Sequence record: OM634661.1
Reading direction: 5' to 3' (one strand)
Length of the DNA stretch: 64,000 bases
Part shown: piece after piece, positions 26,706-60,288 of the stretch
Position numbering within the stretch: the first letter of the stretch is position 1
Layout of the letters: the number at the start of each line of letters is the position of its first letter
Notes under the pieces: model-generated
The model's input: only the letters and a program-made list of their open reading frames with translations
Told to the model about the DNA's origin: nothing
The model's database searches: none
Program-made: the position numbers and the translations under genes

Positions 26706-26791
26706 ACGAATCCCTCCTATTATTTTGATCAATCAGAACATAACACTTTTAAAAAATAAAGTCACCTCCTTTTAATTAAATGATGAAAAAA

Positions 26792-36342: not shown

Positions 36343-36597
36343 TCACCTTTCTTTATCCTTATTCTTTAAAATGGTTTTTTCAATTCTAGAAACAGCAACA
36401 TCAATTGTGTGTTTTAAGAATTCACATGTTCTAAATTCAATTTTGTTATGAAAATCATTTAATCCTATAGTAGATATAGTATCATATAGAAAACCAAAAA
36501 AGAAGTTTGGACTTAAATCAAAATAATTCGATGGAATTTCAATGAATATTTTATCATAAGATGAAGCATGTCTTTTAAGAGATATAGACTTGCTCAC
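36343..36597 (-). CDS. hypothetical protein, STAS-like (DUF4325-like); N-terminus possibly frameshifted from ATG 36668
   Basis: IFIEIP..LSPNFFFGFL..IG motif; the only strong RBS (AAAGGAG) leads an out-of-frame ATG upstream. Confidence 0.4.
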   Translation of the reverse strand: MSKSISLKRHASSYDKIFIEIPSNYFDLSPNFFFGFLYDTISTIGLNDFHNKIEFRTCEFLKHTIDVAVSRIEKTILKNKDKER

Positions 36598-36741
36598 ATT
36601 TAGGCCATGATACTTTTCTTTAATAAAAAAGATGGAATATTGATATGAATATTAAAATGAGATGACATTTTAATGCTCCTTTGGAATGTATTCTTAGCAG
36701 ACTCCCCCCTGGGATATCCCACTTATTATAAAAAAAGAGAA

Positions 36742-37023
36742 TTAAATTAAATCTTCTCTTTGTAAAAATATTTGATTTAATTTTTGTTTTAGATGATTGA
36801 AAGTTTCAAATTTAATATAAAGATTATCTTCATCAAAATCAATATCTTGAATAACGATAATATACTTTCCAGAGTCACCTCGGTATATGAGCATATTTTG
36901 TCCAAATCCAATATGATCATTTAATCTGACAAATTGCTTTTTATCATCATAATCAAAGACAGAATCATTATAATAATTTTTCACTAATTGAACAATCTCA
37001 TCATGTTCTTGTTTTGTCAACAT
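36742..37023 (-). CDS. hypothetical protein
   Basis: 93-aa ORF, RBS AAGGAG. Confidence 0.65.
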   Translation of the reverse strand: MLTKQEHDEIVQLVKNYYNDSVFDYDDKKQFVRLNDHIGFGQNMLIYRGDSGKYIIVIQDIDFDEDNLYIKFETFNHLKQKLNQIFLQREDLI

Positions 37024-37044
37024 AAAATCAACTCCTTTATAAAT

Positions 37045-37082
37045 AAAAGATCGCCCTCGGCTTGGAAACTAAGGCGATCTTT
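37045..37082 (-). terminator. intrinsic terminator downstream of the minigene
   Basis: AAGATCGCCTT..GAGGGCGATCTTTT. Confidence 0.7.
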
Positions 37083-37148
37083 CTCGTTTAATTTGTTATA
37101 TCTAGGTGTTTTTAGGATAACTAATTCCTATATTCATGATGATATTAA

Positions 37149-37172
37149 TTATTTAACAACGATGCGTGGCAT
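37149..37172 (-). CDS. 7-codon minigene MPRIVVK, identical to the C-terminal cap of the poly-Ubl precursor
   Basis: AAGGAGGTG-ACTATTC-ATG CCA CGC ATC GTT GTT AAA TAA. Confidence 0.6.
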   Translation of the reverse strand: MPRIVVK

Positions 37173-37217
37173 GAATAGTCACCTCCTTAAAAGGATGTTA
37201 GATATATATATAGTATA

Positions 37218-37649
37218 TTAGATCTCTTGTACTACTTCTGTTTCTTCAGGTAGAACTGAAATCTTATATGCTCCTAATCGAATATCACTTTTATGTGGAT
37301 GAGAATCAACAATTGTTGTTTTTCTTGTTTTAGGCTGCTTTGTTTCAAAAGACATATCAAGTTCATGAAGTCTTCCAGTTGCAACGATAAATGATCCAAC
37401 TTGAATCGGGTTCTTTTGACTAACTTCATCAAATAAATCTTTTGGTAAAAATACAGTGAACTCTCCGAGTCCATCATCAACTGTTAAATAAACAGCTGCT
37501 GGGTCATCTTCTGTATTAGGCATAAAAGAAGATGTATCTAAAATAGATAAAACTTTTCCACCTAACTTCATGCTCTGCCCAGAATTATAATTTCCTTTAA
37601 TTGCAGCAGTGAAAGTAGTGACATGAGGCTTAATAATTTTAAAGATCAT
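37218..37649 (-). CDS. stand-alone OB-fold protein (DnaE C-terminal/anticodon-binding type)
   Basis: LGGKVLSI..AVYLTVDDGLGEFTVFLP..F..IQVGSFIVATGRL. Confidence 0.6.
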   Translation of the reverse strand: MIFKIIKPHVTTFTAAIKGNYNSGQSMKLGGKVLSILDTSSFMPNTEDDPAAVYLTVDDGLGEFTVFLPKDLFDEVSQKNPIQVGSFIVATGRLHELDMSFETKQPKTRKTTIVDSHPHKSDIRLGAYKISVLPEETEVVQEI

Positions 37650-43646: not shown

Positions 43647-44543
43647 CTATGCTTCTGTTGTTGTCAATTCTTCTTCATTTTCAGAAACTGGATTCAAAAC
43701 TTCTTCAGATAAAGTTTCAAACTTATTAAACTTTGTAGAGAAATTATGAAGTTTTGAGTTAAATGTAACACAATGAGATGAAATGCCCTCATCTTTTAAA
43801 GTAAGAATTGAATTTAAATAGCCAAACATTAATGTTCCAGCTGTAATATTCGTATGAATGTTTTGTGGATTAGACACTGCACGTTCTGCACAGGACTCTT
43901 CTGTTGGCAATTTGTCAGTTCCATCTAAAACTTCTGGGAACATTTCTGCAATACAAGGTGTTCTGAATGAAATAGGAGCACCTGACTTTGTATCTTTTGT
44001 TAGATAGTTTTTAGAATTATGACCAAGTACAACTTGCCCAGCATATTCTTCATTACCAGCATCAACCCAAAAACTATTTTCAATACGTTGATAAACATCA
44101 TGAATGATCTTTCTTGTTTTATTATTATCAACTGCACCAACGAAAACAGGAATTGAATTAGGAACTGATTTTGCAATGTCATAAAGCATTTTTTCTTCAG
44201 TTAAATAAGAGTCAACGATATTAATATCAATACCAAACGCTCTTGCATAGCGCATACCAAGAACTTGCGCCTTGTTTTTACCAACATCACTTGCAAGAAA
44301 GTTTTGTCTAGAGATGTTTTTGGTTTCAACTTCATCTCCATCAATAACAGTTACATAATGAGCAGGATTTGATTCAAATAATTTTGAACCAGCTTTTTGA
44401 TTTTGTAATGAAATTTGACGGAATAAGTTCGGGATAATATAACCGCCATTACCTCCAGAACCAATAATAATAAAATGTTTTGACATTTTTGGAAAGGTTG
44501 ATAATTGATAAGTTGGTGTGAATGAAAGTTCCAAATTAAACAC
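43647..44543 (-). CDS. ThiF/E1-like Ubl-activating enzyme (PRTRC ThiF type)
   Basis: IIIGSGGNGG, IDGDEVETKNISRQNF..GKNKA, AVDN..R, WVDAGN, putative catalytic Cys in ESCAE; start may be TTG 44534. Confidence 0.9.
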   Translation of the reverse strand: MFNLELSFTPTYQLSTFPKMSKHFIIIGSGGNGGYIIPNLFRQISLQNQKAGSKLFESNPAHYVTVIDGDEVETKNISRQNFLASDVGKNKAQVLGMRYARAFGIDINIVDSYLTEEKMLYDIAKSVPNSIPVFVGAVDNNKTRKIIHDVYQRIENSFWVDAGNEEYAGQVVLGHNSKNYLTKDTKSGAPISFRTPCIAEMFPEVLDGTDKLPTEESCAERAVSNPQNIHTNITAGTLMFGYLNSILTLKDEGISSHCVTFNSKLHNFSTKFNKFETLSEEVLNPVSENEEELTTTEA

Positions 44544-44578: not shown

Positions 44579-44826
44579 ATTTTGATTTTATTTACTCTTA
44601 ACAGCTGGATTGAAAAGTTGATACTGTCCATTTTTAATCATAGTTGCAACAATATTACGAATATGTTCAATATCATTATCAACACTTTCAGAATTCACTG
44701 TATATAAATCAATTTCAGAAACGAAAATTGTATCGTCACTTTCATGATCAATAAGACTTACATAATTTTCAAAGTTACTGGCATATTCATCTTCATAATA
44801 TCCAGTGCTATACTCTTCTTCTTCGT

Positions 44827-45897
44827 TTACCAGACCTGTTTTTTTTTTGAATCTTGATAAGGATATTGAGAATCATGGTAAGAATATCCTTGCATGTAAT
44901 CATAGCCTTCTTCAAAATCATACGTGTTTGCATATCCAGTCAATGCTTCACCAGCTGAATAAGAATTAGCTCCACCATAGTTGTAAGTTGTTCTTTTACC
45001 TTTCCATGCAGGAGTAACACTAACTGAATGACAATTATACCAAGCAGCTGGATACTCAACATCAGGCCAAGGACCATTGTAAGGATGGTGTTCTACTTCT
45101 CTTTCTTCAGTGATAACTGGATCTTGGCCTTCAAGATTCAATACAGATGTCATAACCGTTTCTGTTTCATACATTGGTTGATCAAAAAGATGATGATAAG
45201 GAATGTTGATCTTTTTATCACCAGAAACAAAACGGAATAAGAAATCAGGTTGATCTTTTAAAATATTACCATAAACGCCATAAAACTGTGTCATATTTTC
45301 ATTTGAATCATCTGTACTAGACCAGAAAGCATTCATTGTGTGATGAGAATGCGTTTCACATAATGGCGTACAATTTTGTCTAAGCCAATGAACCATACCG
45401 TCATCTTTAAAGTCTGATAGTCCACCAGAGTTTTTCTGAATCGGACAGTAAATAACAAGCTGACCATCTTCTACAAGACCTTCAATTGGCTTCGCAGGAA
45501 TTTTTCCTTGAGCTTGGAAAAACTGAGGAAGCTGAACATTATCATGATTCCAAAAGAATAATACAGAAGCCTCTGTTTTGTCTCTATTGTAAACATCTTT
45601 ATAAAAAGATAGCACTTGAAGCCAATATTTAAAAGGAATTTTAGGTACTAATAGTTGGACTCCCTCCTCTAAAGGAGATAGACCTGGAATAGAAACGTTT
45701 TTGCCGAATTCTTGAATTTGTGTAATGAAAATAGAAATTGGTGTTTTTTCAATACGGAAGACACCATTTGATGCTGTTACGAAATTAAGCTTTTTGGAAA
45801 GGTCTAGATTTTCAAGACCTTCTCCTTTGTATTGTAAATAACCTGTTAATTGAGCTGCTAATTGTTGTTCTAAACTTAAAGCTAGTGGATTTGTCAT
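44827..45897 (-). CDS. prokaryotic JAB/JAMM metallopeptidase (PRTRC protein A type); probably extends to 44588 via the A10 run
   Basis: TEASVLFFW (catalytic Glu), CPIQ..S, JAMM motif HSHHTMNAFWSSTDD. Confidence 0.88.
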   Translation of the reverse strand: MTNPLALSLEQQLAAQLTGYLQYKGEGLENLDLSKKLNFVTASNGVFRIEKTPISIFITQIQEFGKNVSIPGLSPLEEGVQLLVPKIPFKYWLQVLSFYKDVYNRDKTEASVLFFWNHDNVQLPQFFQAQGKIPAKPIEGLVEDGQLVIYCPIQKNSGGLSDFKDDGMVHWLRQNCTPLCETHSHHTMNAFWSSTDDSNENMTQFYGVYGNILKDQPDFLFRFVSGDKKINIPYHHLFDQPMYETETVMTSVLNLEGQDPVITEEREVEHHPYNGPWPDVEYPAAWYNCHSVSVTPAWKGKRTTYNYGGANSYSAGEALTGYANTYDFEEGYDYMQGYSYHDSQYPYQDSKKKQVW

Positions 45898-45927: not shown

Positions 45928-46695
45928 TTACATTCTATTTGACATAAAGTGATCAATTGCTTCTTGAACATTCATATTTTCTGAAATCAAAATATCATTT
46001 GGAAATGAATATTGAGTTCCTTCTTCTTTTGCTTCTTTTAGTTTATCATCAATATATTGAAATAGATGATTTGTTCTAAATACACTAACATTTACATTGT
46101 CTTTTTCATAATTAAAGTCAACAAACTTTTGACTATCTAGATCATGATTAAAGGGATTAGACAAAAATTGATCTGGAACAGTCATAATACCTCTAGAAAA
46201 GTTCACATTTGGATAACTAGATTGTGAACCCCAACAAAGCCAAGGGTCACTATTTGTATTCGAAAATGGATATCTGTAAACTGTCTCATTACCAGAAAGA
46301 ATCTGGCCTTTTAGAGCATATACGCCGCCTTGATGATAAGTTCTTGCTTCTGATCCTTCTTGTTTTCTAAAACTTAAAAGCCAAAGAGCATCAGGTACAA
46401 CAATTTCATATTCAGCAAAGTTTTCATGACTATCATGAACATCATAAGAAACTTTTTTAATATGTTGCGGCACTGTAATTGCATAAAATTCTAATGAATT
46501 CTTTGACGCATATTTAATACAACCCCATTGACTTGGAAGTAAAGGTGTTTGACTAACAGCATTATCCGAAATGACTCGTTGAATATTTTCAACTGTTGTC
46601 TTTTTAATAGATTTCATACCAGAAGGTGTCACCTTTTCAATTGTAACACCTTCCTTTTCAATATGAATGCTTAGTTTAGGATTAGTAACAGACAT
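45928..46695 (-). CDS. prokaryotic E2 family D conjugating enzyme (PRTRC protein B type)
   Basis: TPLLP, VP.ALW, VYALK..TVYRYPFSNT..LCWG (catalytic Cys), FLSNPFNHDL; ATG 46695 after GGAGG. Confidence 0.82.
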   Translation of the reverse strand: MSVTNPKLSIHIEKEGVTIEKVTPSGMKSIKKTTVENIQRVISDNAVSQTPLLPSQWGCIKYASKNSLEFYAITVPQHIKKVSYDVHDSHENFAEYEIVVPDALWLLSFRKQEGSEARTYHQGGVYALKGQILSGNETVYRYPFSNTNSDPWLCWGSQSSYPNVNFSRGIMTVPDQFLSNPFNHDLDSQKFVDFNYEKDNVNVSVFRTNHLFQYIDDKLKEAKEEGTQYSFPNDILISENMNVQEAIDHFMSNRM

Positions 46696-46708: not shown

Positions 46709-48388
46709 TTAAATAATTGAGTATATTCTATTTTGTTCATGGAAATGAGTTACGGTATAAAATCTAACTGGAACTTCATGAACACCTGTTTGCATACCAA
46801 GAATAACTTTTAAATACTTGATAGGATCTCCACATTCAGATGAAATCTTCATGAAATATTGACGATTTTTGTCTAACGGATCTTTTACAAAAGCATGTAA
46901 GTTATTGTTAACGAAATAAATCCCATCCTTGATATGTGAATAATCAGCATTTGTGTTACTGAAAAATTCAAGCGTATCATCTAAACCAGAAAGATATTCT
47001 AAACGAGATTTAAAAAATCTATATGACTCTTTCTCATATTCATCTGTTTCTTCACTTTCAACAGAAGGAGTTTCAACATGTTCCTCTTTCTTTTGTTCGT
47101 CAATTTGTTTTTTGATTAAATCATACAAAGAATTCTCGAAATTTAATACAGGTTTTGAAGTATCATCACTTGTTGATTCAGTTTCAGTTGAATCATCTTG
47201 ATCTTCATTTGAAGAACGAAGAGCTTCCTGATATACTTCATTAAATTGATCTAATGACTCTTGATAATTATCAGGTAAAAGAGATTTAAATGGTGCTGTT
47301 TCAATTTTAATTGCCCATATTGAACCAATGATAACTTTTGCATACTCAATACCATTTTCAACAATAAATTCTTCAACAGAAGTAATTGAAGCAATTACAG
47401 GAACACCTTGTGATTTTTCATATTCAAAACCTTCTGGTAGCTCATCATTATAACCAACAGGAAGCATCATGAATTTTCTAGAACCATCAGGATCATTCTT
47501 AGATAAAATATTAATGTTTAAGCCTGGGACAATAAGATTAGATGAATCTACTTCTTTGTAAATTGGACCATGAAAATTCTCTGTAATATAAGAACGAACA
47601 GAAAGAGCTTCATTTGAAAGGTCCTTCTTAATATAAGATGAGATAATTTTATTATTTTCATCAATTGCTTGTTGATTCATTTGCTGAATCTTTTTATTAA
47701 TATGATCTTCATATTGTCCAACAATATTAGTATAAACTTCTTCATACTGAGACAAAATAAAAGCTTTATCTAGTGTTAAAGTAAGATTTCTAACAATATT
47801 AGTTGTAAGCCTTCTATCGTATGAATTTATTAAATGACTTTTAAATGGGATATGAATATAAAACAACAAAGAATCTTGATGTTCCTTGGTTTTCAAAGAA
47901 AAAAATTGAGCTGATGCAGCATCTTCTATCATTCTTTTAAGTGAACAATAAGTTGAATACATGTTTGCATGATGTTCTTCTAAGTATCTAATGAGTTCCT
48001 TATTATTTTGATCAGATTCTTCATGTCTAATTAATTCTATAGCTTTTAAAGCTGAAATTATTTTCTCATCTACAATACGCAAAGAAAGAGAATTTTTATT
48101 TTCATTAATTCTAGAGCCAGGGAATATCATTTTTAATAGATGTTTAAATGAATTTTTAATCTGATTATCATGATCTTCATTTGAATTTGGAAATTGTTCA
48201 AAAAAAGAAGGTAAATCTTCTAAAAAAGAATCTGTATTAAGTTCATATTCATCTAAAAGGCTGATAGAATACATGTCAGAAGATTGAGTATGTGAAAGAG
48301 CGGTTGTTAAGTCTTTCATTTCACGCAAAAAATTTAAGTAAGCTGCAATATGATTGGATTTTTTACGAAAAAGTTCTAAGTCATTCAT
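46709..48388 (-). CDS. large hypothetical protein in the Ubl operon
   Basis: 559-aa ORF, RBS AAAGGAGG; its stop is 13 nt before the E2 start. Confidence 0.8.
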   Translation of the reverse strand: MNDLELFRKKSNHIAAYLNFLREMKDLTTALSHTQSSDMYSISLLDEYELNTDSFLEDLPSFFEQFPNSNEDHDNQIKNSFKHLLKMIFPGSRINENKNSLSLRIVDEKIISALKAIELIRHEESDQNNKELIRYLEEHHANMYSTYCSLKRMIEDAASAQFFSLKTKEHQDSLLFYIHIPFKSHLINSYDRRLTTNIVRNLTLTLDKAFILSQYEEVYTNIVGQYEDHINKKIQQMNQQAIDENNKIISSYIKKDLSNEALSVRSYITENFHGPIYKEVDSSNLIVPGLNINILSKNDPDGSRKFMMLPVGYNDELPEGFEYEKSQGVPVIASITSVEEFIVENGIEYAKVIIGSIWAIKIETAPFKSLLPDNYQESLDQFNEVYQEALRSSNEDQDDSTETESTSDDTSKPVLNFENSLYDLIKKQIDEQKKEEHVETPSVESEETDEYEKESYRFFKSRLEYLSGLDDTLEFFSNTNADYSHIKDGIYFVNNNLHAFVKDPLDKNRQYFMKISSECGDPIKYLKVILGMQTGVHEVPVRFYTVTHFHEQNRIYSII

Positions 48389-48403: not shown

Positions 48404-48823
48404 TTAAATGAAATCGTCCTCTTGATCAATAGAGGGCAATGCAACAGGTTTAGTGGAATTAATTTTTGAAACAAAAAGAGTATTTTTTCTAACTTTCTGT
48501 GTGTAAATAGAAAGAATATCAGTAGAATAATGTACAAAATAACGTTTAATATTTCCTGAATCATTTTTTACTTGAGCTAATAATGTATTTGAAGAATATT
48601 CTGGTATAAAAAGATTTACGTTTAAGTCAGATACTTTCTCAATTGAATTAACATGATCAATGATAGATTGAAAACGAGCGCTGTAAGATTCTTGAGTTTC
48701 TTCTAATAACCAAAAATCTGACATGACTGCTGCATTAGATGCTGTGTATCCTACATCTATAAGCTTGTTATTCAATTCTTCTTTATTTAAATTTTCAAAA
48801 TCTGTTTGAAGTTGTTGAGTCAA
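48404..48823 (-). CDS. hypothetical protein in the Ubl operon (139 aa)
   Basis: TTG 48823 after AAGGAGGAG. Confidence 0.7.
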   Translation of the reverse strand: MTQQLQTDFENLNKEELNNKLIDVGYTASNAAVMSDFWLLEETQESYSARFQSIIDHVNSIEKVSDLNVNLFIPEYSSNTLLAQVKNDSGNIKRYFVHYSTDILSIYTQKVRKNTLFVSKINSTKPVALPSIDQEDDFI

Positions 48824-48853
48824 ATTAAACTCCTCCTTATTAGTCAATTCATG

Positions 48854-48929: not shown

Positions 48930-49637
48930 TTACTTTACAACGATGCGTGGCATACCTTTAACTCCAGCTTTCACTTCGAAAGTAATTGTATCACCTTCTA
49001 CAGTTGCTGTTGCATTTTCTAATTCTGGATAGAATTTGCTAAACTCTTCTTGAATTTCTTTAACAGTTAGCTCATCATTATCAATTTTTAATTCGTTAGT
49101 ACCGTATTTCACAGTACGAGCCATACCTTTAACTCCAGCTTTTACCTCGAAAGTAATTGTGTCGCCATCGACTGTTGCTGTTGCATTCTCAAGTTCAGGG
49201 TAAAATTTACTGAACTCTTCTTGAATCTCTTTAACTGTCAATTCATCGTTGTCAATTTTTAATTCATTAGTACCATATTTTACTGTACGTGCCATGCCCT
49301 TCACTCCCGCTTTCACTTCAAATGTAATTGTATCTCCATCAACAGTAGCTGTCGCATTTTCTAGTTCAGGGTAGAATTTGCTGAATTCCTCCTGAATTTC
49401 CTTAACAGTTAATTCATCATTATCAATTTTAAGTTCATTAGTGCCATACTTTACTGTGCGTGCCATACCTTTAACCCCCGCCTTTACCTCAAATGTAATT
49501 GTATTTCCTTCTACAGTTGCTGTTGCATTTTCAAGTTCTGGATAGAATTTAGTGAACTCTTGTTGGATTTCCTCAACTGTCAACTCGTCATTATCAATTT
49601 TCAATTCGTTAGTACCGTATTTTACTGTTCTTGTCAT
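48930..49637 (-). CDS. poly-ubiquitin-like precursor: 4 x 57-aa Prok_Ub (PRTRC protein C type) plus MPRIVVK cap
   Basis: ATG 49637 after GGAGG; every unit ends FYPELENATA..ITFEVKAGVKG, matching the PRTRC-C C-terminal GxKG pattern. Confidence 0.88.
   Translation of the reverse strand: MTRTVKYGTNELKIDNDELTVEEIQQEFTKFYPELENATATVEGNTITFEVKAGVKGMARTVKYGTNELKIDNDELTVKEIQEEFSKFYPELENATATVDGDTITFEVKAGVKGMARTVKYGTNELKIDNDELTVKEIQEEFSKFYPELENATATVDGDTITFEVKAGVKGMARTVKYGTNELKIDNDELTVKEIQEEFSKFYPELENATATVEGDTITFEVKAGVKGMPRIVVK
48954..49637 (-). repeat. four tandem 171-bp coding repeats
   Basis: Units at 49637-49467, 49466-49296, 49295-49125 and 49124-48954; many third-position differences. Confidence 0.95.
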
Positions 49638-59329: not shown

Positions 59330-59464
59330 TATAATTCCTCCTTAAAGAATATGGATTTATGACTTCACTATGTAAGCCTATGGATAGTCAGTCCATAGGC
59401 AAAAGTCAAATATAGTAGTCAAATATTATAACAAATCAAGAGAGAATAGAAAAAGTCACCTCCT

Positions 59465-60288
59465 TTAAGGTTGTGTCATTTTTAATTTATTGATAGTAAA
59501 AGCATCTAATATCATTTTTTTTAATTCAGGTCTATGAGAAAATTTACGGTGCACATATTCAAAAAAGTTTTCTTCTGACAAAGAACCTCTATTTATATAA
59601 ATGCTATAATAAGGTTTTTCAGTTTTTCTATAAGAAAAAAATGAAATTTATACTCATACAAATCTAGAGATGTAATGTCATACGGGCTTGATATATCGGC
59701 ATTTCTGAATCGAAATTTTTTTTCTAATTTAGCATTTCCATATATTTTAGAGCAACCTTCTAACCTTGAATTACCTAGAATGACAGCATCGCCAAAAACA
59801 TCAGATTCTTCATAAATGGAGGCAAATTCTCCTACTTTTGCATTTTCCCTAACAGTTGCATGATTAGATATAACAGCACTTGATAAAATAACTGCATGAT
59901 CAAAAACTTGAGCATAATCAAAAACTCTAGATGAACCGCTGACTTTAGCATGGCCATAAACTTTTGCATCATGAGAAATTGTGCCATAACCATAAACTCT
60001 AGCTTCATCTTTTATGATAGAACGATCAAAGACTTTAGCGTTTTGGAAAACACGAGCTTCATCTTTTATTTTTGCGTTATCACAAATCATAGCATTATCA
60101 AATACTTTTGCATCATCATAGATCCAACAATCTGCATCTTGAGATAGATTATTCTCCGATTCAACAAATCCTCCGATATCTCCTTTTTTGACATCTGCAA
60201 AATCTTTTAAAGCTTTAATTCTGTAGAGTTTAGTTCTTCCATTTTGAATTCTAATAAACCTCGTTTTTAATATTTTATATTTACGCAT
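59465..60288 (-). CDS. hexapeptide-repeat phage protein, paralogue 4, frameshifted at the T7 run (59635-59641)
   Basis: RIKALKDFADVKKGDIGGFVESENNLSQ; adding one T restores a paralogue-like C-terminus ending INKLKMTQP (about 274 aa). Confidence 0.75.

What the first reader, a model, noticed from the sequence alone, without database searches (positions are those of the whole stretch)
37149..37190. Stand-alone minigene encoding exactly the poly-Ubl cap peptide MPRIVVK
Seen: AAGGAGGTG, 7 nt, then ATG CCA CGC ATC GTT GTT AAA TAA at 37172-37149, followed by a terminator at 37045-37082. The poly-Ubl tail 11.8 kb away reads ATG CCA CGC ATC GTT GTA AAG TAA: 17 identical nt, the two remaining differences synonymous, and the stop at the same codon. 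Cleavage of the precursor after the last Gly would release this same heptapeptide. Inference: the peptide itself is selected and made by two routes. Possible roles are a regulator or product-inhibitor of JAB/E1/E2, a nucleophilic acceptor for the Ubl, a signal, or a translation-control minigene. Alternatively it is the relic start of a former Ubl gene, since M-x-R-x-V resembles the unit N-terminus.
Basis: partly seen in the sequence, partly recalled or inferred. Interest (0 to 1): 0.85.

Follow-up and report, generated by a model that had tools for sequence, protein, structure and literature searches.

The report
Stand-alone minigene copying a Ubl tail
A Bacillus jumbo phage carries a conserved seven-codon gene with a very strong ribosome-binding site that spells exactly the peptide hanging off the end of its four-unit ubiquitin-like precursor, which suggests, without proving, that this tail peptide is a product in its own right.

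Summary
The window is Bacillus phage vB_BauM_KLEB27-3. At 37188-37149 (-) a 10-nt perfect Shine-Dalgarno sequence and a 6-nt spacer precede ATG CCA CGC ATC GTT GTT AAA TAA. A 65-nt spacer and an intrinsic terminator follow.

The ORF is 22/24 nt and 7/7 aa identical to the tail ("cap") of the 4-unit poly-Ubl gene 11,781 nt upstream. Similarity begins exactly at the ATG; the flanks are unrelated.

Three diverged relatives from Logan assemblies keep both loci.
- The cap shows at least 3 synonymous and 0 non-synonymous changes.
- The minigene's SD-to-stop block shows 0 variable columns of 40. The whole SD-to-terminator element shows 5 of 145, against 28 of 144 third positions in the neighbouring gene (p=1e-5).

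The element is therefore constrained, not a decaying relic.

The limits are real. The clade is shallow, and no synonymous change in the minigene proves coding constraint. More distant relatives (WH1, Edson and others) have other caps and no minigene. There are no expression data.

Best reading (about 0.4): a translated mini-cistron copied from the cap and kept for its peptide. Rivals: a ribosome-binding or RNA-stability element, or a relic inside a conserved terminator block.

The parts
37179..37188 (-). Shine-Dalgarno sequence AAGGAGGTGA of the minigene, followed by the 6-nt spacer CTATTC (37178-37173).
   Evidence: a 10-nt perfect complement of the 16S 3' end, top three in the window. It is invariant in 4 phages.
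37149..37172 (-). Seven-codon ORF ATG CCA CGC ATC GTT GTT AAA TAA, encoding MPRIVVK.
   Evidence: It is identical in 4 phages, and 7/7 aa and 22/24 nt identical to the poly-Ubl cap.
37084..37148 (-). Conserved 3' spacer between the minigene stop and the terminator.
   Evidence: 4 variable columns of 67 (the count runs about 2 nt into the terminator stem), against about 19-24% at neutral-like sites. A 1-nt indel in one relative excludes a longer ORF on either strand. There is no Rfam match.
37044..37083 (-). Intrinsic terminator: 13-bp stem, small internal hairpin, T-run. It is the 3' edge of the conserved element.
   Evidence: One variable column of 38, in the loop. In SRR19546410 the sequence diverges completely just past the T-run.
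37189..37217 (-). Variable linker between the gp184 stop and the SD. It marks the 5' edge of the conserved element.
   Evidence: 7 of 29 columns are variable, including a TA-repeat indel.
37218..37649 (-). gp184, 143 aa, no family hit. It is the upstream cistron with which the minigene is probably co-transcribed.
   Evidence: No sigma-70-like promoter lies between it and the minigene. Its homologues in WH1 and Edson sit in the same synteny after the Ubl operon.
36742..37023 (-). gp183, 93 aa, the gene downstream of the terminator. It is absent in one relative that keeps the minigene element.
48930..48953 (-). Cap of the poly-Ubl precursor: ATG CCA CGC ATC GTT GTA AAG TAA, encoding MPRIVVK after the last Gly.
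   Evidence: In relatives the Arg codon is CGC/CGT/CGA and the Ile codon is ATC/ATT, while the peptide is unchanged. AF2 pLDDT is below 50, so the cap is predicted to be a flexible tail.
48930..49637 (-). Poly-Ubl gene gp199: four 57-aa Prok_Ub units, each ending AGVKG, plus the cap.
   Evidence: PF14454, 4 stretches, E=5e-27. TIGR03738 PRTRC_C, E=9e-17. The AF2 model shows four beta-beta-alpha-alpha-beta-beta units.
48404..48823 (-). gp198, a small operon protein of unknown function.
   Evidence: It is syntenic in all relatives.
46709..48388 (-). gp197, a 559-aa operon protein of unknown function.
   Evidence: no family hit. It is syntenic in relatives.
45928..46695 (-). gp196, an E2-like protein.
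   Evidence: Weak hits below the family cut-offs: PF14460 Prok-E2_D, E=3e-4, and PRTRC_B, E=1e-3. The relatives' orthologue carries a PF14460 hit on record.
44588..45897 (-). gp195, a JAB/JAMM peptidase (356-aa ORF), together with the following stretch annotated as a gap. That stretch stays open in another frame. One frameshift, treated here as one part.
   Evidence: PRTRC_A, E=3e-7. Prok-JAB. An HxHx7SxxD motif is visible in the translation. The downstream 79 codons are open and evolve like coding sequence in 4 phages.
43647..44534 (-). gp194, a ThiF-type E1-like adenylyltransferase.
   Evidence: TIGR03736 PRTRC_ThiF, E=8e-31. PF00899.

Best explanation
The feature is a small, highly translated terminal cistron. 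It was made by copying the last eight codons (ATG to TAA) of the phage's poly-Ubl gene to a site behind a very strong ribosome-binding site, at the 3' end of the gp184 transcription unit. It has been kept by selection in the KLEB27-3 clade.

Its product, MPRIVVK (or PRIVVK after Met removal), is the same peptide that the operon's JAB peptidase should release when it exposes the last Ubl's C-terminal Gly.

The most likely way it works is as a free mimic of the precursor's tail. That tail is itself a truncated copy of the N-terminal strand of a Ubl unit. The free peptide would occupy the site on a pathway enzyme that normally holds the residues following the scissile Gly. The JAB peptidase is the first candidate and the E1 the second. 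In that way it would tune when mature Ubl-Gly is produced or used.

Shown:
- the anatomy;
- identity that stops at the ORF's 5' edge;
- the direction of copying, cap to minigene;
- purifying selection on the element;
- peptide-level conservation of the cap.

Inferred:
- translation of the minigene;
- cleavage of the cap by JAB;
- any activity of the free peptide, and its target.
For: (1) The SD is a 10-nt perfect anti-SD complement with a 6-nt spacer to an ATG, top three of the window. Apart from one site whose GTG opens only a 49-codon ORF, every other SD of at least 8 nt at workable spacing precedes a real gene.

(2) Similarity to the cap starts exactly at the ATG and includes the stop. The 5' flank is unrelated and the 3' flank matches for at most 9 nt.

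(3) Four phages carry both loci. Their poly-Ubl genes differ at 11-46% of third codon positions.

(4) Variable columns among the 4 phages:
- SD to stop: 0 of 40;
- spacer: 4 of 67;
- terminator: 1 of 38;
- adjacent linker: 7 of 29;
- gp184 third positions: 28 of 144.
Fisher p=1.3e-5 for the element. P(0 of 40)=2e-4 at the third-position rate.

(5) The cap shows at least 3 synonymous and 0 non-synonymous events inside the clade. There are 5 synonymous and 0 non-synonymous events across both loci (chance 7e-4). The loci therefore share a peptide, not a nucleotide motif.

(6) Related caps occur in distant phages: IARIFQVK, IASCFQVK, I/LLRIQIAYVK. This tail type is therefore old at the poly-Ubl C-terminus, and the minigene is the derived copy.

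(7) The cap matches a unit start at 17/21 nt with a one-codon gap, and the cap's stop falls at the unit's Tyr codon.

(8) JAB pre-processing of a bacterial Ubl's C-terminal extension is established for BilA/BilC (PMC10557695).
Against: - No substitution has occurred in the minigene, so there is no direct sign of coding-type (synonymous-only) evolution. P(0 of 40) is 0.32 if it evolves like first and second codon positions, so the data are equally compatible with RNA- or DNA-level constraint.
- The 3' spacer is also constrained, which a peptide-only function does not explain.
- Terminator-containing intergenic blocks are conserved elsewhere in this clade: 1 variable column in about 75 nt after the cap.
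- The feature is restricted to one shallow clade. WH1 and Edson (cap GLEFFKAIAPKLRKK) and relatives L022 and L025-L027 have no second copy of their own cap.
- Caps across the family range from 1 to 22 residues with unrelated sequences, so a cap peptide is not generally a conserved effector.
- Unit junctions in relatives vary after the Gly, which argues against a strict requirement for the residues following the cleavage site.
- Two other perfect SDs in the window have no start codon after them, so strong SDs without genes do occur in this phage.
- There are no expression or proteomic data, and no precedent for a stand-alone gene for a Ubl propeptide.
Confidence: 0.4

Rival explanations
1. The element acts in cis on ribosomes or RNA. 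The perfect SD with its mini-ORF loads ribosomes on a roughly 150-nt RNA that ends in a strong terminator. This could work as a Bacillus-type mRNA stabiliser, or define a stable small transcript. The conserved 3' spacer would carry the real function. Identity with the cap would then be a leftover of how the sequence arose, not a requirement.
For: - Constraint covers the spacer (4 of 67 variable) and the terminator as well as the ORF, and there are no synonymous changes in the ORF.
- The same extended SD (GGAGGTGAC...) recurs six times on this strand, twice with no start codon after it. SD-type 5' stabilisers are known in Bacillus and its phages: cryIIIA STAB-SD and the SP82 polypurine stabiliser (my own knowledge, not checked here).
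- The element stays in place when the downstream gene is exchanged.
Against: - A cis element has no need for a copy of another gene's last eight codons that begins exactly at the start codon, or for an ATG at ideal spacing and a stop at the same codon.
- The predicted 5' domain fold is not better than shuffles (z=-1.5).
- There is no Rfam match and no promoter-like site immediately upstream.
- Complementarity to other window transcripts is at chance level.
- The element sits at the 3' end of a unit, just before a terminator, where a 5' stabiliser has little to protect.
Confidence: 0.27
2. The minigene is a relic with no function of its own. It would be a fragment or collapsed remnant of a second poly-Ubl gene: unequal recombination between the first unit's start and the unit-like cap would leave RBS, ATG, cap and stop. 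It would survive only because it lies inside a conserved terminator/linker block used for modular exchange between these phages.
For: - Relatives often carry two tandem poly-Ubl genes, each with its own RBS, cap and terminator.
- The collapse model explains why similarity begins exactly at the ATG and why an RBS and a terminator flank it.
- Terminator blocks are near-invariant elsewhere in the clade.
- A gene-content breakpoint lies at the terminator's end in SRR19546410.
- The gp184-minigene-gp183 area is a low-divergence island.
Against: - The flanks show no similarity to the flanks of any Ubl gene in this phage or in seven relatives.
- Tandem paralogues in relatives have different caps, not identical ones.
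- The SD-to-stop block is invariant (0 of 40) while the 29 nt just upstream vary at 24% and the 15 nt after the cap's stop vary at 40%. Conservation therefore tracks the translational signals, not the intergenic block as a whole.
Confidence: 0.18
3. The minigene is a leader-peptide attenuator. Translation of the mini-ORF would control read-through of the terminator into gp183 and the genes beyond. In a variant of this idea, the nascent heptapeptide acts inside the ribosome at termination, both here and at the end of the poly-Ubl ORF.
For: The layout is RBS, short ORF, terminator, RBS of the next gene. Both copies of the heptapeptide are followed by an intrinsic terminator.
Against: - No alternative (antiterminator) pairing links the ORF region to the terminator arm.
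- The stop lies 65 nt before the hairpin, too far for a terminating ribosome to touch it.
- The element is retained unchanged where gp183 is missing and a different sequence follows.
- The peptide contains no known arrest motif (my own knowledge).
Confidence: 0.07

Closest known systems
C-terminal extension of ubiquitin and Ubl precursors: the extra residue(s) after the last repeat of eukaryotic polyubiquitin, and BilA Gly97|Ala98 cut by the JAB enzyme BilC.
   Same: Head-to-tail Ubl units each end in Gly, with extra residues after the last Gly that must be removed before E1 can act. A JAB peptidase is encoded in the same operon (PMC10557695). Tandem bacterial Ubl repeats were noted in PMC1779556.
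   Different: Known caps are treated as disposable blocking residues. None is known to be encoded a second time as a free-standing gene. Here the cap is 7 residues, is held constant through synonymous change, and is duplicated behind its own RBS.
Ubiquitin-ribosomal protein fusion genes (the UBA52 and RPS27A type; my own knowledge).
   Same: This is the precedent for a Ub precursor whose C-terminal extension is itself a functional product released by processing, and which in other lineages is encoded by a stand-alone gene.
   Different: Those extensions are folded proteins of 52-80 aa with a known role. Here the extension is a heptapeptide of unknown activity, and both routes exist in one genome.
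Phage lambda bar minigenes and other very short ORFs with a strong SD (my own knowledge).
   Same: A strong SD, an AUG, a handful of codons and a stop, in a phage intergenic region.
   Different: Bar minigenes have about 2 codons, act through peptidyl-tRNA drop-off in Pth-limited hosts, and copy no other gene. This ORF has 7 codons and is an exact copy of another gene's end.
Leader-peptide attenuators of Gram-positive bacteria (the erm, cat-86 and cmlA type; my own knowledge).
   Same: A short ORF (5-19 codons) with a good RBS, upstream of a hairpin and the next gene.
   Different: No alternative pairing was found. The stop is far from the hairpin. The downstream gene is not constant.
STAB-SD and polypurine 5' mRNA stabilisers of Bacillus and phage SP82 (my own knowledge).
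   Same: A perfect complement of the 16S 3' end in a non-genic position. The window holds two further such SDs with no start codon after them.
   Different: Stabilisers sit near the 5' end of long mRNAs and need no specific ORF. This one is followed by a defined ORF and, about 105 nt downstream of the SD, a terminator.

Membership tests
Poly-Ubl precursor with a C-terminal cap (polyubiquitin-like) | Tandem head-to-tail beta-grasp Ubl units, each ending in Gly. | tested here: met
   Four PF14454 stretches, E=5e-27. The units end AGVKG. The AF2 model shows four repeated beta-beta-alpha-alpha-beta-beta units. Foldseek matches to ISG15 and di-ubiquitin are weak.
Poly-Ubl precursor with a C-terminal cap (polyubiquitin-like) | Extra residues after the last Gly, removed by a cognate peptidase. 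| tested here: inconclusive
   The cap MPRIVVK is present and predicted to be disordered. A JAB gene with an intact JAMM motif lies in the operon. Cleavage itself cannot be tested with these tools.
PRTRC-type / Prok_Ub-E2-JAB-E1 operon (TIGR03734-41; Iyer et al. 2006) | Ubl (PRTRC_C), a ThiF-type E1, a JAB protein (PRTRC_A) and an E2-like protein (PRTRC_B) together in one operon. | tested here: inconclusive
   PRTRC_C scores 61 bits, above its cut-off of 45.95. PRTRC_ThiF scores 107 bits, below its cut-off of 144.75. PRTRC_A (30 bits) and PRTRC_B (18 bits) fall far below their cut-offs. This is a distant phage-borne relative, not a member by the curated thresholds. The ParB-related partner was not looked for.
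Bil (BilABCD) anti-phage ubiquitination system | Proteins matching the defence-system models. | tested here: not met
   PADLOC gives no Bil hit. Only weak E1-E2 model hits for ThiF were found. The system is encoded by the phage, not the host.
Leader-peptide transcription attenuator | Mutually exclusive terminator and antiterminator pairings, coupled to ribosome position on the short ORF. | tested here: not met
   Folding with and without the terminator's 3' arm reveals no competing helix that involves the ORF. The stop lies 65 nt upstream of the stem.
Leader-peptide transcription attenuator | A constant regulated gene downstream. | tested here: not met
   gp183 is absent in SRR19546410 while the element is unchanged.
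Minigene of the lambda bar type | A strong SD, an AUG, very few codons and a stop. | tested here: met
   Note that this ORF has 7 codons, against about 2 in bar.
Minigene of the lambda bar type | Acts by peptidyl-tRNA drop-off and tRNA sequestration. | not testable with these tools
   This needs expression and physiology data.
Independent small RNA gene, or dual-function sRNA | Its own promoter, a terminator and a conserved structure. | tested here: inconclusive
   The terminator is present. No promoter-like site lies immediately upstream. The 5' domain has z=-1.5. There is no Rfam family match. Too few substitutions exist for a covariation test.
STAB-SD type mRNA stabiliser | A perfect anti-SD complement close to the 5' end of a transcript that it protects. 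| tested here: inconclusive
   The perfect SD criterion is met. The position relative to RNA ends is unknown.

The most novel reading that the evidence does not exclude
The C-terminal propeptide of a viral poly-Ubl precursor is a bioactive micro-peptide. The phage makes it both by JAB processing of the precursor and from a dedicated seven-codon gene, which uncouples its dose and timing from Ubl production. It would be the first stand-alone gene for a Ubl tail. It could act as a regulator of Ubl maturation or conjugation, or as a small signal released at lysis.
Probability: 0.3. Interest if true: 0.8.

Novelty: new variant of a known kind. Interest (0 to 1): 0.55.

Why it matters
Caps on ubiquitin-type precursors are regarded as throw-away blocking residues. 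A cap kept constant through synonymous change, and encoded a second time behind one of the strongest ribosome-binding sites of the genome, would mean the tail is a product with its own role. That in turn would give a handle on how a phage-borne Ubl/E1/E2/JAB pathway is regulated; the function of this pathway is itself unknown.

It would also be one of the shortest protein-coding genes supported by comparative evidence. The question can be tested with ordinary expression and proteomic measurements.

If the rival readings hold, the case still has value. It would show how repeat-containing genes shed fragments that become fixed inside conserved intergenic blocks.

Tried and rejected
- **Chance match.** Rejected. 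The 11 IMG/VR hits to the 17-mer are unrelated N-termini or antisense matches.
- **Degenerate peptide-level pattern ATGCCNCGNATHGTNGTNAARTAA.** It found 0 hits in IMG/VR, 0 in GTDB genomes, and one chance antisense hit in JGI metagenomes. No further relatives were found that way.
- **Relatives at DNA level in GenBank phages.** None. Relatives were reached only through proteins: WH1 and Edson, and three Logan assemblies.
- **A co-varying minigene in distant relatives.** A second copy of each relative's own cap is absent.
- **Flank homology to any Ubl gene flank**, which would support a duplicated or collapsed paralogue. Not found.
- **A shared nucleotide motif** (a protein- or RNA-binding site common to both loci). 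Rejected, because the cap copy drifts at synonymous sites and no antisense copy exists.
- **A long ORF on the opposite strand (36988-37221).** Rejected, because of a 1-nt indel in one relative and replacement of its start region.
- **A known RNA family.** None. There are no tRNAs in the window.
- **An antiterminator.** None.
- **A significant 5' domain fold.** No.
- **sRNA target complementarity.** It is at chance level overall. The 10-nt match to the start regions of gp198 and ThiF is weak, and the substitutions in relatives only keep wobble pairs.
- **Homology between this element and the 720-nt non-coding gap at the syntenic site in WH1 and Edson.** None.
- **Sequence search of the PDB with the poly-Ubl.** Only spurious repeat matches.
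- **Literature searches** for the phage names and for PRTRC or phage Ubl systems found nothing on this feature.
Full report
**Identity of the window.** The window is part of Bacillus phage vB_BauM_KLEB27-3 (OM634661.1, 216.7 kb, host B. australimaris). Window coordinate plus 124,000 gives the record coordinate. The minigene region is annotated as intergenic, between gp184 and gp183.

**Check of the observation.** On the minus strand the sequence reads TTTTAAGGAGGTGACTATTC ATG CCA CGC ATC GTT GTT AAA TAA (ORF 37172-37149). A 65-nt spacer follows, then a 13-bp G+C-rich hairpin with a T-run (about 37083-37044), then the RBS and start of gp183.

The poly-Ubl gene gp199 (48930-49637) encodes four 57-residue units, each ending AGVKG, followed by MPRIVVK and a stop. 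Its last 24 nt are ATG CCA CGC ATC GTT GTA AAG TAA. The two 24-mers differ at two synonymous third positions. No shuffle reproduced a second match, and the genome holds only these two copies.

The SD is AAGGAGGTGA, a 10-nt perfect complement of the 16S rRNA 3' end, with a 6-nt spacer to the ATG. It is one of the three strongest in 64 kb.

**Context.** The genes downstream of the poly-Ubl form an operon related to the PRTRC / Prok_Ub-E2-JAB-E1 systems that Iyer et al. predicted in 2006. [quoted passage not shown]
- Ubl: PF14454, four stretches, E=5e-27; PRTRC_C above its cut-off.
- E1: ThiF, PRTRC_ThiF E=8e-31, below its cut-off.
- JAB: PRTRC_A and Prok-JAB, weak hits, with a visible HxHx7SxxD motif.
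- E2-like: Prok-E2_D and PRTRC_B, weak hits.
- No PADLOC Bil model matches.
- An AF2 model shows four repeated beta-beta-alpha-alpha-beta-beta units (mean pLDDT 72.7). The last ten residues, including the cap, are below pLDDT 50, so the cap is a flexible tail outside the fold.
- Foldseek gives only weak hits, to POTRA repeats, ISG15 and linear di-ubiquitin.
- JAB pre-processing of a Ubl's C-terminal extra residue is experimentally established in the Bil system (PMC10557695). Release of the heptapeptide is therefore a reasonable inference, though untested.

**Where the cap comes from.** With one extra codon allowed, the cap aligns to the start of unit 2 at 17/21 nt: ATG GCA CGC ACA GTA AAG TAT against ATG CCA CGC ATC [GTT] GTA AAG TAA. 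The cap's stop falls where the unit has Tyr. In more distant phages the same position carries IARIFQVK, IASCFQVK or I/LLRIQIAYVK, which share h-x-R/S-I/C...V-K-stop. The cap is therefore an old feature at the poly-Ubl C-terminus, probably a truncated extra unit start. The minigene carries all the derived features of the KLEB cap, so the copy went from cap to minigene.

**Extent of the copy.** The gap-free similarity is 33 nt: the ORF plus 9 nt 3' of it, where 7/9 match in KLEB and 5/9 in two relatives. It stops exactly at the ATG on the 5' side, where 1 of the 6 preceding bases matches. Local alignments of 70-160 nt of flank are no better than shuffles: p=0.55 upstream and p=0.10 downstream against the poly-Ubl gene. 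They also find no convincing match to the flanks of nine other Ubl genes from relatives.

**Relatives.** GenBank phages hold no DNA-level relative. Protein searches found two groups.
- Distant relatives: WH1 and Edson.
- Close relatives: three Logan assemblies, SRR19546416, SRR19546410 and SRR32006999. Their poly-Ubl proteins are 98, 90 and 85% identical to KLEB's, and their poly-Ubl genes differ at 11, 34 and 46% of third codon positions.

All three close relatives carry both the cap MPRIVVK and the minigene.

*At the cap.* The Arg codon is CGC, CGT, CGC and CGA in the four phages, and the Ile codon is ATC, ATC, ATT and ATT. That makes at least three synonymous and no non-synonymous events (chance 0.013). 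Counting the two fixed differences between the loci gives five of five synonymous (chance 7e-4).

*At the minigene.* Nothing has changed. The variable columns among the four phages are:

| Region | Variable columns |
|---|---|
| SD to stop | 0 of 40 |
| Spacer | 4 of 67 |
| Terminator | 1 of 38 (in the loop) |
| Linker between the gp184 stop and the SD | 7 of 29 |
| gp184 third positions | 28 of 144 |
| gp184 first and second positions | 8 of 288 |

The element as a whole (5 of 145) differs from third positions with Fisher p=1.3e-5. P(0 of 40) is 2e-4 at the third-position rate, but 0.32 at the rate of first and second positions.

The element is thus under purifying selection, and its 5' edge is sharp at the SD. 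The data cannot tell constraint on the encoded peptide from constraint on the nucleotides.

**Caveats from the same comparisons.**
- Other intergenic gaps are 83-95% identical between these phages, against 95-98% for this one.
- However, the terminator block after the cap is also almost invariant (1 variable column in about 75 nt), while the 15 nt right after the cap's stop vary at 6 positions. Terminator blocks are therefore generally conserved in this clade.
- The gp184-minigene-gp183 area is a low-divergence island.
- In SRR19546410, gp183 is missing and the sequence diverges completely just past the T-run. The element therefore belongs with the upstream unit and is not a leader specific for gp183.
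- A 1-nt indel in the spacer of that phage rules out any longer ORF across it on either strand.

**Distant relatives.** WH1 and Edson share the synteny (Ubl operon ... gp184 homologue). Their cap is GLEFFKAIAPKLRKK. They have no second copy of it anywhere in their genomes or in the syntenic region. After the gp184 homologue they have a 720-nt non-coding stretch unrelated to the KLEB element. Four further relatives (L022, L025, L026, L027) also lack a cap-like mini-ORF in the 8-21 kb available. The minigene is therefore specific to the KLEB27-3 clade.

**RNA-level tests.**
- No Rfam family matches.
- The whole region folds better than shuffles (z=-3.8), but that is driven by the terminator.
- The 5' domain pairs the end of the SD and the AUG with sequence just after the stop. 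It is not significant (z=-1.5).
- No antiterminator alternative exists.
- No sigma-70-like promoter lies just upstream.
- Complementarity to other transcripts of the window is at chance level.
- The extended SD GGAGGTGA occurs six times on this strand, and two occurrences (near 59463 and 26769) have no start codon behind them. Perfect SDs without genes therefore exist in this phage. That keeps a ribosome-binding or stabiliser reading alive.

**Interpretation.** Four facts have to be explained together:
1. The copy begins exactly at the start codon.
2. An optimal RBS that was not part of the copied sequence sits in front of it.
3. The whole SD-to-terminator element is under purifying selection.
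4. The amino-acid identity between the loci is maintained while the cap's synonymous sites drift.

A neutral relic explains none of the constraint. A pure RNA element explains the constraint but not why the copy begins exactly at the start codon or why an optimal RBS precedes it. A leader attenuator fails its structural tests.

The reading that covers most facts is a translated mini-cistron retained for its peptide. The extra constraint on the spacer is then left to transcript stability or termination. I put this at about 0.4. Within it, the specific idea that the free peptide mimics the precursor tail on the JAB peptidase or the E1 is inference only.

The other readings are weighted as follows:
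- ribosome-binding or RNA element: about 0.27;
- relic fixed in a conserved linker, possibly a collapsed second poly-Ubl gene, given that tandem paralogues exist in relatives: about 0.18;
- attenuator or nascent-chain variants: about 0.07;
- something not considered: the remainder.

**Novelty and verdict.** The poly-Ubl operon is a distant, phage-borne member of a kind predicted in 2006. A stand-alone gene for a Ubl precursor's tail has no counterpart that I know of or could find. Function is unproven and the clade is shallow, so I rate it a new variant of a known kind (a conserved micro-ORF / precursor cap), with interest 0.55.

Noticed in passing
window 44588-45897 (-): The 283-nt stretch annotated as a gap between the JAB gene gp195 and ThiF is open for 79 codons in another frame in all four clade members. 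Its substitutions fall mostly at third positions (16 of 25 in the most diverged pair). Homologues in WH1, L026 and L027 are about 450-460 aa, against 356 aa here. This amounts to one frameshift, conserved and possibly programmed. The extra piece has no detectable similarity to the WH1 C-terminus.
   Followed up: partly
window 48954-49637 (-): The four Ubl units are 89-100% identical in protein but only 79-84% identical in DNA. The repeats are heavily recoded at synonymous sites, which indicates strong protein-level selection and would also reduce recombination between repeats.
   Followed up: partly
L015 8789-9688 (WH1 gp211): The 5-unit poly-Ubl of phage WH1 is labelled 'virion structural protein' in its GenBank record. 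This hints that the Ubl, or its conjugates, end up in particles. No paper with the basis for that label could be found.
   Followed up: partly
L025 3240-4613; L026 9543-10579; L027 9516-10738: Several related phages carry two tandem poly-Ubl genes (2-4 units each), each with its own RBS, a different cap and its own terminator.
   Followed up: partly
L022 13827-16287: In a 165-kb metagenomic relative, the position of the JAB gene is taken by a 195-aa ORF, a LAGLIDADG-type ORF and a 256-aa ORF. This may be a homing-endonuclease insertion or an intron in the JAB gene.
   Followed up: no
L014 6403-7124; L013 6412-7133: WH1 and Edson have a 720-nt stretch without ORFs after the gp184 homologue. It is 76-89% identical between the two phages, as conserved as the neighbouring genes, and has no Rfam match. 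It may be a large non-coding RNA.
   Followed up: partly
window about 59455-59470 (-) and 26760-26780 (-): Two further perfect SDs (AAAGGAGGTGAC) have no ATG, GTG or TTG at a usable distance. One overlaps the stop of the preceding ORF and lies just upstream of an extended -10 promoter-like TGTTATAAT. They may be mRNA stabilisers, or the starts of lost genes.
   Followed up: partly
window 36343-36741 (-): gp182 (84 aa) together with a 22-codon ORF that has its own RBS corresponds to a single 114-aa gene in all three close relatives. The gene appears split once in KLEB27-3.
   Followed up: partly
window 37087-37096 (-) against 48821-48830 and 44532-44541 (-): CAAAUUAAAC in the minigene's 3' spacer is complementary to GUUUAAUUUG, which spans the TTG start codons of gp198 and ThiF, both in the Ubl operon. 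The two substitutions seen in relatives keep G.U wobble pairs. It is only 10 A+U-rich base pairs, and the overall complementarity count is at chance level.
   Followed up: partly
L020 10640-10680, against window 36742-37040: The SRR19546410 phage lacks gp183. The breakpoint lies immediately after the minigene's terminator, an example of modular exchange at terminator blocks.
   Followed up: partly
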